From Blepharisma stoltei ATCC 30299 (taxonomy: Eukaryota > Protista > Ciliophora): DNA of 64,000 nt. The first letter of the stretch is position 1; every line of letters starts with the position of its first letter. The notes beneath the pieces were generated by a model, which worked only from the letters and a program-made list of their open reading frames with translations, was not told where the DNA came from and made no database searches. Where the stretch lies: the NCBI GenBank assembly GCA_965603825.1, contig CBFDEM010000001.1, positions 248,001 through 312,000 of the forward strand, given 5' to 3'. Both the position numbers and the translations under genes were made by a program. Positions 7,274-11,574 of this stretch are shown in pieces.

Positions 7274-8222
7274 GTTAATTTATTAGATATAGAGCATGAA
7301 AATTCATTTTCATGCTATAATGTCTTAATTCAAATGCCTCAAAATTGCCACAGAGTAGAATTTTAAGGTTTTGATTTTAAATGAAAAGAAAAATTAGACA
7401 AATAAAATCAAAATGATTCTGAGATTTTAAGCTGGATATATATAAGTTATAAATTTTTTATCAAGATTTTGTGATTTTTATATCATTTTTACCGGTTAAT
7501 CTTTTCCTTTTATAATCTCTGTCATATTTTTAAATTTAAAGAAATTTATTTTAAAAATATAGCCCTTAATAGCATAATTGAATATCTGGAATATATTTAA
7601 TTATCTTGATAACTAACAGGATTATTTCATTTGGAATAATATTAAATAAGCTACTTATTCATGATTTACAATTATTTAAGTGTTTATCTTAGCACTTGAG
7701 CTTATCAAATTATTTTAATAAAATTTTTTTCTATAATCTAGGATTAATTATTTAAATTTAAACCTTTCTCCAATTATTAAATTAGTCATTCATAAATTCG
7801 CAATTCATTATTTTAAAATTTATATTTGCCCCATTTTTAATAACTTTAATAACTTTAAGAACCATATTTATTTTAGCTATTTAAATTATTTATGTTAATT
7901 GCTTAACAAATACTGACTTTCTTTCAGAGTTATAATTTACAAAATTTATTCCTAATTTTTACTTATTTTTTGCCAAAGATTATATTTTTATTATATCTTC
8001 AATTAGCTTCCATTAGAATTCGAAAAATTGGCTTTTCAAATTCCATAGAACTTTTATATCCCATCTTCATAACCCCATTTATGTTTAAATAATTTAAAAA
8101 TCTCCAACTAAGGCCACCTTCAAATTTGATATCTACTTTGAGAAAATCCATTTTCTCCTAGCCATTAAAAAAAAGAATCACTATCTTATCAGCTCGAATA
8201 TGGTGTGATTATCTAATAAATA

Positions 8223-9191
8223 ATGCTTATGTCAGAAATGCGATCGTCAGAAGAACCAAAACATACAGTCTTTTATCACACCGAAGGGAAACTTAAAAAA
8301 GGCTTCACCAAAAAAGGCCCCAAAAAGCCAGGCTCACCACCAGAATTCAAAAAAGACTCAGCCTCCTCCACGTCCGATAGTGACCCAGCCAAAGCACTTC
8401 CAATCCCCCACGGAGACAATCCATATGCCAAAGCCAAACAAGCTGAATACAAAGACAAAGATTACAAAAAGGCCGAGCTCTACTACAAGCAAGCCATAGC
8501 CCAAGGCGATAGAGTAGAAAGCGCAGTTAAGGACTTAGCCAGTTTATTGCACCAGCGAGGCAAAACCGCTGAAGCCTGCAAGCTTTTGGAGACCCACCGC
8601 GGTTTATTTGTAAATGATTTTGAAAAGTACCAAAACTTGTACAATACCATTTACAAGCAGTTAGACGAAACTGCTAGCTCTCTCAGCAGGATTTTAAAAG
8701 TTTCAGGGCTACATAAAGATGAAACTTCTGATAAAGTGAGGGAGCTGTTCAACAATTCTTCAAGAATTTTAGAAGTGGTGATGGGAACTGAAGAGGAGGA
8801 TGGGGACACAAATTATTACGCTTTCCTCAGATTCAATTCTCACTCTTCAGCTAGAAAAGCTTTAGAAGGCTTCAGAAACTGGACTCGGCACAGAGTGGAG
8901 TGGGTCAGGAAATCTGGAGAAATCATAGGAGACGCCCATTATGCCCGTCATAAAATGGAGGAATACAGAAAAGCTAACCCAACGTTCGACTATATCATTT
9001 TTGAAAGAGACCCTAAAGGCTACGTCCTTAGCTTGCCAATTGATGGACACAGCGCAAAAAAAGAAGACTTCTCTGAAGGCGAGCTTTCGGTCAAAGGGCT
9101 ACTTGGAAGCGAACTTTATGAGTCCATTTTTAATTATATGGACGCCTCGCCAATCAACTCTTTACGAGTGTCTGAAGTGCGTGTAAACTAA
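8223..9191 (+). CDS. TDM1/MS5(POLLENLESS3)/SDI1-like TPR protein fused to an RRM-like domain, 322 aa
   Basis: PHGDNPYAKAKQAEYKDKDYKKAELYYKQAIAQGDRVESAVKDLASLLHQRGKTAEA resembles the plant MS5/TDM1/SDI1 signature GDxPYxRAKxAQLxxKD...AINAGDRVDSALKDMAVVMKQ. RNP2-like LKVSGL and RNP1-like YYAFLRF lie downstream. Confidence 0.75.
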   Translation: MLMSEMRSSEEPKHTVFYHTEGKLKKGFTKKGPKKPGSPPEFKKDSASSTSDSDPAKALPIPHGDNPYAKAKQAEYKDKDYKKAELYYKQAIAQGDRVESAVKDLASLLHQRGKTAEACKLLETHRGLFVNDFEKYQNLYNTIYKQLDETASSLSRILKVSGLHKDETSDKVRELFNNSSRILEVVMGTEEEDGDTNYYAFLRFNSHSSARKALEGFRNWTRHRVEWVRKSGEIIGDAHYARHKMEEYRKANPTFDYIIFERDPKGYVLSLPIDGHSAKKEDFSEGELSVKGLLGSELYESIFNYMDASPINSLRVSEVRVN

Positions 9192-9264
9192 TATAAATAA
9201 TAAAAATTTATAGGAAAATATTTCTTCCATATGGAATTATTTATTCCATATATTGTGGAATTAA

Positions 9265-11574
9265 ATGGACGAGGACCAGACCAAGTGTTTAGAAGACGCA
9301 ATTTCTGTAGTTAAAGACGAGTCGTATCATATGCAGAGGGCTCTTGATTCTAATAACTTGAATGAGGCTTTAAAGCATGCTTCTAATATGATAGGTGAAC
9401 TTCGCACTTCATTATTATCTCCGAGGTCTTATTATGAGCTCTACATGCAGGTTTTTGATCAACTGAGCAGAATTGAGGCGTTTTTCAGAGAAGAGTCCCG
9501 CAGGGGTACAAGAATTGTAGAGCTTTATGAGAAAGTCCAGCATACCATCAGCATTCTTCCCAGACTTTACCTCTTAATCACTGTAGGCTCAGTATATATA
9601 CAAACCAAAGAGCTCCCAGCCAAGGATATATTGAAAGACCTCATTGAAATGGTAAAAGGTGTCCAACATCCACTAAGAGGGCTGTTCTTAAGATATTATC
9701 TTAATAAAGTGTGTAAGGACAAGCTTCCTGATAAAGGCTCAGATTTTGGAGATGGAGATGTCACTGATTCAATTGATTTTTTGGTGCAGAATTTGTCTGA
9801 AATGAACAGACTTTGGATCAGAATGCAGCATACAGGGTCTGTGAAGGACAAAACAAAGAGAGAAAAAGAAAGAAATGACTTGAGAGTGACTGTAGGAGAA
9901 AATATCAATAGATTGTCAAGCTTACAAGGAGTTAATATTGATGTATATCAAGAATTAGTGCTCCCTAAGATATTAGAGATTGCCGTTTCGAATAAAGATG
10001 CTATTTCTCAGCAATACCTGATGGATTGCATTATACAGGCGTTTTCTGATGATTTCCACCTACATACACTTCAGCCTCTGCTAGAAGCTTGCAGCAATTT
10101 GCAGCCAACTGTAGATATCCAATCCATTGTGATTACTCTTCTTAACAGACTTTCAGACTATGCAGGAGAAGCAGAGCTTGAAGTTGTGCAAAGAATTGAC
10201 ATTTTTGGCTTAATTAAGGCTTACATCGATAAAGTTGTTTCCGATCAAGAAAGTTCTCTTGATACAAAAAAGCTTCTTTTATTACAAGTCGCTTTTATGA
10301 AGCTCTCACTGAAGTGTTACTCATTAAATACAAACAACGTTAACACTATCCTAGAATCTTGCGTTTCACTTATTGACAAAAGTACCCCAGAAAACAGAAT
10401 CCATCCTGAATCTCTTAAATCGATAGTCAAGCTCCTTTCTTTCCCATTAGAAACTTTATCATTCGCTATTTTAACTCTAAACAACTATCCAAAACTAATG
10501 ACTTATCTGCCGTTTTCTTCAAGAAAGCAAGTCGCCTTCAAGATTGTTCAGTCAGTGGTTGTGAGCAAGAAAAGTCTTGATACGCTTGAAACAACAACTC
10601 AGCTGCTTGAATTTGTGTCACCTTTGCTATTTGATACAAGTGACTCAGAAGAAGGAGCTGATGCTTATGAGTTTGAAGATGAACAAAACACTATTGCAAA
10701 GCTTTCTCATCTTGTAAAGTCAGCTGATCTTGATACTCACTACAAAATACTGAGTCTTCTTAAGCAGAGGTTTTCGCAAGGAGGGGATAAAAGAATAAAA
10801 TACACTTTCCCATCACTTATATTTGCTTATATTAATTTCGCTAAACTTTTGAATGCTTCTGAAGATAGCTGGAATACTCATCTGGAGCAAGTGCTCGAAG
10901 TCTTAGCAGAATTAGTAAGCAAAACCTCAGAAAATAACCCTGATCTTGCCCTTAAGCTGAATCTGCAGTGCTTACAGCTAATAAATCAATTCAAAAATAA
11001 TAAATACCAGCACACAGCTCTTGAATTTGTAGAGCAAGCATTTTATGTTTATAAAGAAGAACTCGCTGATTCGTATGCAAAACATGCAGCCATTGATTTA
11101 ATATGTGCAACTTTGGTGACATTAAATTGTTTTGATGACGACACTTCAGATTCTCTTGTTAAATTATGCACTCAGCAAGCACTTAGACAGTTTAAGAAGC
11201 ATGACCAATGCACTGGATTAAGCTCTTGCACCCATTTATTTTATAATGAATTCAACCAAAATGAAAGAATCATCAGCGACTGCTTAGGAAAAGCTGTGAA
11301 AATTGCAGAAATATGCATTACTCATAAGAACTCAGTCAATTTATATTTAACTTTGATCAATAAATATCTTTATTATCTTTTACAAGGGGTAAGCACTCTT
11401 GAAGAAGACTCCGTGAATCAGCTAATTCAGGCGACTAAAGACAGTATTGCAACAGCTGAAAAAGAAGGAGATAATAGAGTTAGCATTAAGGATATCAAAT
11501 CGTATCTAAGAACTACTTTGAACTACATCAAAGCAAGGCAACAAGAAGGAAAACTTAGCGGAATTTCAGTTTAA
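9265..11574 (+). CDS. VPS35: Retromer subunit VPS35
   Basis: Motifs ALKHASNMIGELRTSLLSPRSYYELY, LPRLYLLITVG, GVQHPLRGLFLRYYL and EMNRLWIRMQH. Confidence 0.97.
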   Translation: MDEDQTKCLEDAISVVKDESYHMQRALDSNNLNEALKHASNMIGELRTSLLSPRSYYELYMQVFDQLSRIEAFFREESRRGTRIVELYEKVQHTISILPRLYLLITVGSVYIQTKELPAKDILKDLIEMVKGVQHPLRGLFLRYYLNKVCKDKLPDKGSDFGDGDVTDSIDFLVQNLSEMNRLWIRMQHTGSVKDKTKREKERNDLRVTVGENINRLSSLQGVNIDVYQELVLPKILEIAVSNKDAISQQYLMDCIIQAFSDDFHLHTLQPLLEACSNLQPTVDIQSIVITLLNRLSDYAGEAELEVVQRIDIFGLIKAYIDKVVSDQESSLDTKKLLLLQVAFMKLSLKCYSLNTNNVNTILESCVSLIDKSTPENRIHPESLKSIVKLLSFPLETLSFAILTLNNYPKLMTYLPFSSRKQVAFKIVQSVVVSKKSLDTLETTTQLLEFVSPLLFDTSDSEEGADAYEFEDEQNTIAKLSHLVKSADLDTHYKILSLLKQRFSQGGDKRIKYTFPSLIFAYINFAKLLNASEDSWNTHLEQVLEVLAELVSKTSENNPDLALKLNLQCLQLINQFKNNKYQHTALEFVEQAFYVYKEELADSYAKHAAIDLICATLVTLNCFDDDTSDSLVKLCTQQALRQFKKHDQCTGLSSCTHLFYNEFNQNERIISDCLGKAVKIAEICITHKNSVNLYLTLINKYLYYLLQGVSTLEEDSVNQLIQATKDSIATAEKEGDNRVSIKDIKSYLRTTLNYIKARQQEGKLSGISV

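What the first reader, a model, noticed from the sequence alone, without database searches (positions are those of the whole stretch)
8223..9191. Ciliate homologue of the plant meiotic-exit factor TDM1/MS5 (SDI1 family) fused to an RRM
Seen: GDNPYAKAKQA..DKD...AIAQGDRVESAVKDLA, followed by an RRM-like segment (LKVSGL...VRELF...YYAFLRFNSHSSARKAL). Established: the GDxPYxRAKxAQLxxKD...AINAGDRVDSALKDMA block is the hallmark of Arabidopsis TDM1/MS5/POLLENLESS3 and SDI1/2. These are generally described as plant proteins without an RRM, and TDM1 ends meiosis by sequestering eIF4F in P-bodies. Inference: the module may be far older than plants, and here it is wired directly to an RNA-binding domain. 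That would fit an undescribed mRNA-targeted translational repression system, possibly limiting nuclear divisions during conjugation. This is my best candidate for a novel system in the window.
Basis: partly seen in the sequence, partly recalled or inferred. Interest (0 to 1): 0.8.

Follow-up and report, generated by a model that had tools for sequence, protein, structure and literature searches.

The report
Ciliate TPR–RRM protein with plant MS5-type block
A real, transcribed Blepharisma gene joins an RNA-recognition motif to a ~90-residue helical block that is truly related to the conserved start of plant TDM1/MS5/SDI1 proteins. The block is also common in bacteria, and the gene is one of at least 15 copies, so it is not a dedicated meiosis-exit factor by any evidence here.

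Summary
Window 8223-9191 (+) is an intact 322-aa ORF, covered by unspliced ~1.1-kb transcript-like contigs. It encodes a disordered N-terminus, a TPR-like block (aa 58-150), an RRM (aa 157-228, Pfam 32.9 bits against a cutoff of 20.7) and a conserved C-terminal extension.

The block is specifically related to the N-terminal block of plant MS5/TDM1/POLLENLESS3/SDI1:
- hhalign gives 98.9%, E 2.7e-17.
- A plant-side profile scores the ciliate protein 33.5 bits, against at most 24.6 bits for any solved generic TPR.

- The block is closer to one in large bacterial CSD–TPR–STAND NTPases (45% identity, E 2e-35). In a quick tree the plants group with bacteria, apart from the protist TPR–RRM proteins.
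- The rest of the plant TPR domain is absent here.
- Blepharisma stoltei has at least 15 paralogs. Stentor, Fabrea and Tetrahymena also have members.

My reading is an RNA-tethered TPR adaptor family. This is an inference. A meiotic-exit or eIF4F-sequestering role is untested and not favoured.

The scan noted the same architecture on three other pieces of this genome; these are probably paralogs.

The parts
8102..9218 (+). Transcribed unit: about 1.1 kb, unspliced, 5' UTR up to ~120 nt, 3' UTR ~6-27 nt
   Evidence: Contigs of runs X1-X4 lie at 8186-9198, 8112-9197, 8102-9218 and 8106-9208. There are no joints, and there is no cover of 7400-8100 or 9220-9520. The runs are only guessed to be RNA.
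8223..9191 (+). Coding sequence, 322 aa plus TAA stop
   Evidence: It is identical to protein P0001, and 81% identical to a named B. stoltei paralog.
8223..8393 (+). N-terminal Lys/Ser/Pro-rich region (aa 1-57), predicted disordered, containing S38-P39
   Evidence: pLDDT is under 50 for aa 1-57. These alignment columns are not conserved across the family.
8394..8672 (+). MS5/SDI-type TPR block (aa 58-150): LPIPxG cap, helix 0 (PYAKAKQAEY), then two TPR-like hairpins including GDRVESAVKDLASLLHQ
   Evidence: Helices at 67-77, 81-94, 98-111, 115-129 and 133-145, with pLDDT 88-93. hhalign against plants: 98.9%, E 2.7e-17. hhalign against bacteria: 99.9%, E 2.1e-35. Reciprocal plant-profile score: 33.5 bits.
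8691..8906 (+). RRM (aa 157-228); RNP2 = L158-K-V-S-G-L163, RNP1 = N197-Y-Y-A-F-L-R-F204
   Evidence: Pfam RRM_1 32.9 bits against a cutoff of 20.7. The model shows a beta-alpha-beta-beta-alpha-beta order. The top Foldseek PDB hits are RRMs (TIAR, HuR, Y14, RBM39), probability 1.00, TM by target about 0.6.
8907..9188 (+). C-terminal extension (aa 229-322): GDAHYARHKMEEYRKxxPTFDY, two short strands, and an LLGxxLYxxIF helix; no known family
   Evidence: Strongly conserved in the 4-paralog subfamily and in Stentor and Fabrea. Model confidence is lower, pLDDT 47-69. No Pfam hit. Eleven further paralogs match the family profile only up to about position 237 and differ after the RRM; in the sequences I read they keep the terminal LLGxxLF.

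Best explanation
The locus is an ordinary, intact, expressed nuclear gene of Blepharisma stoltei. It encodes one member of a ciliate protein family of at least 15 paralogs in this genome. Members also occur in Stentor and Fabrea, and there is a divergent one in Tetrahymena. The fixed architecture is a disordered N-terminus, an MS5/SDI-type TPR block, an RRM and a C-terminal tail. Three things are shown here. First, the ~90-residue block belongs to one specific TPR subfamily. The same subfamily forms the conserved N-terminal block of plant MS5/TDM1/POLLENLESS3/SDI1 proteins, and it sits just after a cold-shock domain in ~1500-1800-aa bacterial STAND NTPases. Second, the RRM has a genuine RRM fold. 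Third, the gene is covered by transcript-like contigs. The rest is inferred. The protein probably works as a bivalent adaptor: the RRM holds an RNA, and the TPR block docks a protein partner. Family members would then direct the fate of particular RNAs, such as translation, storage or decay. The Ser/Pro-containing disordered N-terminus is a likely point of regulation. It is a paralogous branch of the module's family, not an orthologue of TDM1. Nothing ties it to meiosis.
For: Gene and transcript. Family: 64 word-index hits of 200-340 aa; the named ones are Blepharisma, Stentor and Fabrea. The exhaustive profile search gave 802 hits at E<=1e-3, including Tetrahymena TTHERM_00092800. There are 15 matches in the window's own genome, 4 full-length and 11 without the same tail. 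RRM. Plant link: 90 plant contigs were fetched with a DRVDSALKDMA pattern. One ORF lies in a 90%-identity cluster with a Sphagnum fallax protein, and its Atlas neighbours are named Pollenless3 and SDI1-like at 0.96. The ciliate block's own Atlas neighbours include the same SDI1-like cluster (0.91) and a Streptophyta cluster (0.95). The ciliate profile scores plant full blocks 59-70 bits. hhalign: 98.9%, E 2.7e-17. BLASTP: 1e-13. Reciprocally, the plant profile scores bacterial and protist blocks 42-51 bits and P0001 33.5 bits, against at most 24.6 bits for any PDB chain and 13.3 bits for OGT. Bacterial link: hhalign 99.9%, E 2.1e-35; 43 loci across Chloroflexota, Cyanobacteriota, Pseudomonadota, Acidobacteriota, Spirochaetota and others. 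A cold-shock domain lies just upstream in 10 of 20 bacterial proteins by Pfam, and the upstream-region profile hits solved CspB/CspA. An AAA_16 STAND NTPase lies downstream. Plant function comes from the literature: TDM1 binds eIFiso4G2 and is taken to P-bodies by SMG7 (PMC13284301), and SDI1 binds MYB28 (PMC5055385).
Against: No experiment bears on function. RNA binding is not assured. The canonical RNP2 aromatic position is Lys (20 of 21). RNP1 position 5 is aliphatic in 19 of 21, although it is Phe in this protein. The ciliate block profile is close to the TPR consensus. It also scores OGT's TPRs at 48.8 bits, and plant scores fall to 15-37 bits once the 11 residues used to fetch the plant contigs are masked. 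The claim of specificity therefore rests mainly on the reciprocal plant-side test, the non-TPR cap motif (PxGxxPYxxAK) and the Atlas features. The plant sequences were fetched by a motif recalled from memory, which biases the forward scores. The taxonomy of most family members is unknown, because they come from unnamed metagenome proteins.
Confidence: 0.55

Rival explanations
1. The RRM is a protein-binding pseudo-RRM of the UHM or Y14 kind. On this reading the family is a purely protein-protein scaffold with no direct RNA contact.
For: RNP2 position 2 is Lys in 20 of 21 members. RNP1 position 5 is Ile, Leu or Val in 19 of 21. A conserved extension follows the RRM and could cover its sheet. 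Y14 and CBP20 are among the Foldseek hits.
Against: RNP1 positions 3 and 8 are aromatic in 19 of 21 and 21 of 21 members. This particular protein also has Phe at position 5. Pfam RRM_1 is above threshold, and the closest solved sequences are RNA-binding RRMs: HuR, nucleolin, RBM39. The bacterial relatives carry another single-strand nucleic-acid binder beside the same block.
Confidence: 0.25
2. One reading: a functional counterpart of TDM1 that ends meiotic or post-meiotic nuclear divisions during conjugation by repressing translation through sequestration of eIF4F.
For: The block is shared with TDM1. TDM1 acts through eIFiso4G2 and P-bodies (PMC13284301). The RRM would place the block on mRNA.
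Against: There are at least 15 paralogs in one genome. The block is nearer to bacterial blocks than to plant ones (against 46), and plants group with bacteria in the tree. The remainder of the plant TPR domain is absent. The plant family itself has non-meiotic members: SDI1 binds a transcription factor. Contigs are present in all four runs laid, with a roughly constant word-depth ratio to the neighbouring Vps35 gene. That is a poor measure of expression.
Confidence: 0.07
3. There is no specific kinship. The block is a generic consensus-like TPR pair that resembles the plant motif by convergence.
For: The ciliate block profile scores OGT at 48.8 bits and designed consensus TPRs at 49-86 bits summed. 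Pfam sees only generic TPR models. Masking the fetch motif cuts plant scores to 15-37 bits.
Against: From the plant side the order is clear: bacterial and protist blocks score 42-51 bits and P0001 33.5 bits, while the best PDB TPR scores 24.6 and OGT 13.3. The alignment is collinear over 87 columns and includes the non-TPR cap PxG(D/E)(S/T)PYxxAK and the C-terminal (D/E)N(L/V)LxxLxK. Only 802 of 1.84 billion representatives reach E<=1e-3 with the family profile, and every hit I inspected carries the signature.
Confidence: 0.05

Closest known systems
Plant MS5/TDM1/POLLENLESS3/SDI1 family (Arabidopsis At4g20900, At5g44330, At5g48850, At1g04770, At3g51280)
   Same: They share the ~88-residue N-terminal block: PxGDxPYxxAK, AIxxGDRV(D/E)SA(L/V)KD(M/L)A and (D/E)NxLxxLxK. 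Identity is 34-36%, collinear with a single one-residue gap.
   Different: Plant proteins continue with further canonical TPRs and have no RRM. The ciliate protein replaces that region with an RRM and its own tail. The TDM1-specific T16-P17 site could not be matched. Plant blocks group with bacterial ones rather than with the ciliate family. The literature describes the family as conserved in plants (PMC4752240).
Bacterial CSD–TPR–STAND NTPase giants (~1300-1800 aa; e.g. in Thermogemmatispora aurantia, Tengunoibacter tsumagoiensis, Oscillatoria, Anaerolineae; uncharacterised)
   Same: This is the closest relative of the block: 45% identity, hhalign E 2.1e-35. It also sits beside a small single-strand nucleic-acid-binding domain.
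   Different: These are bacterial. The nucleic-acid binder is a cold-shock OB fold upstream of the block, not an RRM downstream. More TPRs and an AAA_16/nSTAND NTPase follow. The neighbouring genes encode AAA_16 plus a protein kinase, or AAA_16 plus a Swt1-like HEPN.
Helical-repeat plus RRM proteins such as SART3/Prp24 (HAT repeats + RRMs); from my own knowledge, not tested
   Same: The same design principle: an alpha-helical repeat protein-docking domain joined to an RRM.
   Different: No sequence relationship was found. Repeat type, domain number and size all differ.

Membership tests
Plant MS5/TDM1/POLLENLESS3/SDI1 family | Conserved N-terminal block (PxGDxPYxRAK ... AINxGDRVDSALKDMA ... 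LDNxLxxLYK) | tested here: met
   hhalign 98.9%, E 2.7e-17, 87 columns. BLASTP 58 bits, E 1e-13 against a Sphagnum member. The plant profile scores P0001 33.5 bits, against at most 24.6 bits for any PDB TPR. The plant sequences are named through Atlas clusters Pollenless3 and SDI1-like.
Plant MS5/TDM1/POLLENLESS3/SDI1 family | Downstream canonical TPR repeats that complete the TPR domain (the region Pfam calls TPR_1/TPR_2 in the plant clusters) | tested here: not met
   BLASTP of P0001 against the 665-aa Sphagnum protein aligns only the block. In P0001 the following residues are an RRM. The plant and bacterial proteins do show a second weak TPR match downstream.
Plant MS5/TDM1/POLLENLESS3/SDI1 family | Closest relatives are family members (orthology to TDM1) | tested here: not met
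   Ciliate to bacterial: E 2.1e-35 at 45% identity. Ciliate to plant: E 2.7e-17 at 34%. In a quick ML tree of 91 columns, plants fall inside a clade of 46 bacterial rows plus P0164 behind a 98% SH-aLRT branch, apart from the protist TPR-RRM rows. The alignment is short, the tree is unrooted and it is the quick search only.
TDM1 subfamily | N-terminal five-residue motif with the T16-P17 CDK site (PMC4752240) | not testable with these tools
   No TDM1 N-terminus was available by reference. P0001 has S38-P39 in a disordered, non-conserved region, which cannot be equated with it.
TDM1 / SDI1 | Binding to SMG7 and eIFiso4G2, the APC/C, or MYB28 | not testable with these tools
   Known only from plant experiments. 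No complex prediction was run, because I do not claim binding.
RRM (Pfam PF00076) | Profile match above the curated threshold | tested here: met
   32.9 bits against 20.7, aa 159-217.
RRM (Pfam PF00076) | Beta-alpha-beta-beta-alpha-beta fold | tested here: met
   AF2 strands at 157-163, 182-192, 195-204 and 224-228, with helices at 169-174 and 207-215, pLDDT 82-91. Foldseek top hits are RRMs, probability 1.00.
RRM (Pfam PF00076) | Canonical RNP2/RNP1 aromatic residues that stack on RNA | tested here: inconclusive
   RNP2 position 2 is Lys (20 of 21). RNP1 position 3 is Tyr or Phe (19 of 21). RNP1 position 5 is Phe here but aliphatic in 19 of 21. RNP1 position 8 is Phe (21 of 21).
Bacterial CSD–TPR–STAND NTPases | Cold-shock domain, extended TPR array and AAA_16/nSTAND NTPase | tested here: not met
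   P0001 shares only the block and has no CSD or NTPase match.

The most novel reading that the evidence does not exclude
The ~90-residue MS5-type block may be an ancient, cross-domain docking module for RNA-protein machinery. In bacteria it sits next to a cold-shock domain. In ciliates it is fused to an RRM. In plants, where it has no nucleic-acid binder of its own, it is found in TDM1, which binds eIFiso4G2 in P-bodies. If the block contacts a conserved translation or RNA-decay component in all three, the ciliate family would be a set of directly RNA-tethered translational repressors. The biochemical role of the TDM1/SDI1 block would then become testable in simpler systems.
Probability: 0.2. 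Interest if true: 0.75.

Novelty: new variant of a known kind. Interest (0 to 1): 0.55.

Why it matters
Papers describe TDM1/MS5 and SDI1 as a plant family of unknown biochemistry beyond "a TPR protein". Its most conserved block turns out to belong to a wider subfamily. That subfamily has hundreds of members in bacteria and protists, and twice it sits beside a single-strand nucleic-acid-binding domain. This gives plant researchers a defined, separable module to mutate. It also gives a concrete hypothesis for the block's role: docking to RNA-protein machinery. For ciliate biology it defines an unstudied, expanded family of putative RNA regulators in giant heterotrichs and names a Tetrahymena gene (TTHERM_00092800) that could be knocked out. 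It does not by itself show any new mechanism.

Tried and rejected
1. Two word-index searches aimed at plant proteins found nothing (a bacterial block segment; protein P0129). This reflects the 5-residue word index and length filter, not absence. All three searches of that tool are used.
2. Searching paper text and one supplement for the motif strings found nothing relevant.
3. Masked-motif control. Masking the 11 residues used to fetch plant contigs leaves 15-37 bits. I do not treat this as decisive, because the ciliate profile also gives OGT 48.8 bits. I used the reciprocal plant-profile test instead.
4. Possible internal repeat. GDAHYARHKMEEYRK (aa 236-250) resembles GDNPYAKAKQAEYKD (aa 64-78). 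Family C-segments score about 0.5-1 bit (one at 4.3) on the N-motif profile, against a shuffle 95th percentile of -0.3 and 99th of 1.85. This is not significant and I dropped it.
5. The whole-model shape search of the ESM Atlas returned only the family's own ciliate cluster (TM 0.33) and generic RRM proteins.
6. Expression timing could not be settled. The runs are stored as contigs, so no levels or time points can be read. The PNAS supplement holds no RRM or TPR entries. TTHERM_00092800 appears in no searchable paper.
7. PADLOC on the bacterial giants gave only weak CSD and TPR-CSD model matches.
8. Plant genomic contigs are spliced. I used single exons by reference (A2) and did not join exons. 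Longer plant ORFs came only from the transcript-like contigs L051, L058 and L081.

Full report
**The locus.** The window comes from the 64-contig macronuclear assembly of Blepharisma stoltei. My evidence for that is a scan note, the own-genome search, which places the window at contig 1, 248001-312000, and a named B. stoltei protein that is 81% identical. Positions 8223-9191 (+) form a single open frame of 322 codons ending in TAA. The frame has no TGA, so the Blepharisma reading of TGA as Trp (PMC9942806) does not matter here. G+C rises to 0.41-0.50 over the gene, between spacers of 0.17-0.23.

Contigs of four runs of one 2022 study cover 8102/8186 to 9197/9218. They show no joints and do not cover either flanking spacer. 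The next gene is covered by separate contigs. The runs are only guessed to be RNA, but this pattern is what transcript assemblies give. I read it as an unspliced ~1.1-kb mRNA with very short UTRs. The neighbours are unrelated: Vps35 downstream (779.8 bits) and a SAPS-like gene upstream on the other strand.

**Anatomy.** The AlphaFold model built from a 21-sequence family alignment (mean pLDDT 69.6) shows four parts:
- A disordered N-terminus (aa 1-57).
- Five to six helices at aa 67-145, with pLDDT 88-93.
- A beta-alpha-beta-beta-alpha-beta unit at aa 157-228, with pLDDT 82-91.
- A less confident extension to aa 322.

Pfam calls RRM_1 at aa 159-217 (32.9 bits, cutoff 20.7). For the helical part it gives only sub-threshold generic TPR models (TPR_19, 22.8 bits against 25). 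The top Foldseek matches of the model in the PDB are RRMs: TIAR, HuR, Y14, RBM39 and CBP20, with probability 1.00 and target TM about 0.6.

The RNP motifs are only partly canonical:
- RNP2 is L-K-V-S-G-L, with Lys at the usual aromatic position in 20 of 21 family members.
- RNP1 is N-Y-Y-A-F-L-R-F. Position 3 is aromatic in 19 of 21 and position 8 in 21 of 21.
- RNP1 position 5 is Phe here but aliphatic in most members.

**The family.** The word-index search found 64 proteins of 200-340 aa with the same layout. The named ones are from Blepharisma, Stentor coeruleus and Fabrea salina. Conservation is strong across three regions:
- The block: LPIPKGxSPYALAKxAEYKxRDLxKAExYYxQAIxxGDRVESAIKDLASLLHQRGKT.
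- The RRM: FNSHSSARKTLEGF.
- The tail: GDAHYARHKMEEYRKxxPTFDY ... LLGxxLF.

The exhaustive profile search of 1.84 billion representatives gave 802 hits at E<=1e-3 and 381 at E<=1e-10. Among them is Tetrahymena thermophila TTHERM_00092800 (418 aa). It matches through the block and the RRM core, so the fusion seems to predate the split of heterotrichs from other ciliates.

The window's own genome has 15 matches. Four are full-length, including this gene and its 81%-identical paralog. Eleven match the family profile only up to about position 237 and differ after the RRM. The scan's first readers noted the same architecture on three other pieces of this genome. I take these for some of those paralogs.

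**Is the block really the plant MS5/TDM1/SDI1 block?** No tool returned plant proteins directly. I scanned the metagenome collection with a degenerate DNA pattern for DRVDSALKDMA, a motif recalled from memory. It returned 90 contigs. Their translations are plainly plant genes with an intron after ...RAKxx. Two transcript-like contigs encode a 665-aa protein. It sits in a 90%-identity cluster with Sphagnum fallax KAH8936634.1. Its Atlas neighbours are named "putative Pollenless3" and "SULFUR DEFICIENCY-INDUCED 1-like", both at 0.96. The ciliate block's own Atlas neighbours include that same SDI1-like cluster (0.91, 181 of 256 features) and a Streptophyta cluster (0.95).

Using single exons and these ORFs by reference, without joining exons, I obtained:
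- The ciliate profile aligns to plant full blocks end to end at 59-70 bits.
- Profile-profile comparison gives 98.9%, E 2.7e-17, over 87 columns at 34% identity.
- Plain BLASTP gives 58 bits, E 1e-13.

Two cautions apply. The plant set was fetched with 11 residues that resemble the ciliate sequence. Masking them lowers the scores to 15-37 bits. The ciliate profile is also close to the TPR consensus: it gives human OGT 48.8 bits.

The discriminating test is therefore the reverse one. A profile of the plant exon block scores bacterial and protist blocks 42-51 bits and this protein 33.5 bits. Those sequences had been collected independently of the plant motif. The best of all PDB chains reaches 24.6 bits, and OGT reaches 13.3. 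In addition, the alignment includes the non-TPR cap PxG(D/E)(S/T)PYxxAK. Taken together, I accept a specific relationship.

The block is abundant in bacteria. Many hits of the exhaustive search are 1300-1600-aa proteins with the block near residue 500. One cluster includes a Parabeggiatoa MAG protein. A scan of one genome per prokaryotic species found 43 loci. They lie in Chloroflexota (including cultured Thermogemmatispora and Tengunoibacter), Cyanobacteriota, Pseudomonadota, Acidobacteriota, Spirochaetota, Nitrospirota, Planctomycetota and others.

These proteins carry further TPRs and a C-terminal AAA_16/nSTAND NTPase. Just upstream of the block they carry a cold-shock domain. Ten of 20 match Pfam CSD on their own, and the profile of that region hits solved CspB/CspA chains. 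Adjacent genes encode AAA_16 plus a protein kinase, or AAA_16 plus a Swt1-like HEPN.

The pairwise profile comparisons rank as follows:
- Ciliate to bacterial: 45% identity, E 2.1e-35.
- Bacterial to plant: 37%, E 4.6e-27.
- Ciliate to plant: 34%, E 2.7e-17.

A quick maximum-likelihood tree was built from 190 rows and 91 columns. It used the quick search only and is unrooted, and many forks are unresolved. It places the three plant rows inside a clade of 46 bacterial rows plus P0164. A branch of 98% SH-aLRT separates that clade from the protist TPR-RRM rows. Plant and bacterial proteins also share a further TPR after the block, which the ciliate proteins lack. So this gene is not an orthologue of TDM1. 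It is a separate branch of a module family that spans bacteria, plants and protists. Whether plants acquired the module from bacteria cannot be decided on 91 columns.

**How it probably works.** The shown facts are the architecture, the homologies and the transcript-like cover. The rest is inferred. TPR pairs are protein-docking surfaces. In plants, proteins built on this block bind specific partners: TDM1 binds SMG7 and eIFiso4G2 in P-bodies and also the APC/C, and SDI1 binds MYB28. An RRM next to such a block suggests an adaptor that brings a partner to an RNA.

The independent pairing of the block with a cold-shock domain in bacteria makes a link to nucleic acid more credible. The many paralogs with different tails suggest diversification of targets or partners rather than one dedicated switch. 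I put the adaptor reading at about 0.4-0.5. A pseudo-RRM scaffold gets about 0.25, because of the degenerate RNP2. Pure convergence of a generic TPR gets about 0.05.

**Novelty and verdict.** The papers I could search describe the family as conserved in plants (PMC4752240). None links it to ciliates or bacteria. That is limited evidence of absence. I class the finding as a new variant of a known kind: a known plant module in a new architecture, with an unexpectedly wide distribution. It is a useful lead for TDM1/SDI1 biochemistry and for ciliate RNA biology. It is not evidence of a new system. Interest 0.55.

Noticed in passing
window 8200-8223 (+): There is a seven-codon upstream ORF in the 5' UTR (ATG GTG TGA TTA TCT AAT AAA TAA, with TGA read as Trp in Blepharisma). 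Its TAA stop overlaps the main start codon (TAATG). It lies inside three of the four transcript-like contigs.
   Followed up: no
L121:4207-9300 (+) with L121:9249-11654 (+); L118:3955-9288 (+) with L118:9278-10795 (+): Bacterial giants (1698 and 1778 aa) carry a cold-shock domain, the MS5-type TPR block and a STAND NTPase. Each is followed by a second AAA_16 protein fused to a Ser/Thr kinase (Thermogemmatispora) or a Swt1-like HEPN (Oscillatoria). This looks like an uncharacterised signalling or conflict module. PADLOC gives only weak CSD and TPR-CSD matches.
   Followed up: partly
G000 contigs C2, C39, C21, C28, C13, C52, C16, C36, C24, C54, C63 (loci L139-L142 read): Eleven further B. stoltei paralogs keep the block and the RRM. 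They replace the GDAHYARHKMEEYRK tail with other sequences, and in the sequences I read they retain a terminal LLGxxLF motif. So there are two or more subfamilies.
   Followed up: partly
L134:3001-4254 (+) (protein P0154) and relatives P0138, P0152, P0166: A distinct clade of 330-470-aa proteins has a KDYAGLLHMRG variant of the block and a divergent RRM-like region. They lie on gene-dense, apparently intronless eukaryote-like contigs of unknown organism, so the fusion may reach beyond ciliates.
   Followed up: partly
window 9265-11574 (+): A full-length Vps35 retromer gene (Pfam 779.8 bits) starts only 74 nt after the stop of the TPR-RRM gene. In all four runs the contigs cover it only from 9528 on, possibly because the tool filters out human-like reads.
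   Followed up: no
window 8928-8972 (aa 236-250): GDAHYARHKMEEYRK resembles the start of the block (GDNPYAKAKQAEYKD). The resemblance scored no better than about the top 3-5% of shuffles, so it is probably chance.
   Followed up: yes
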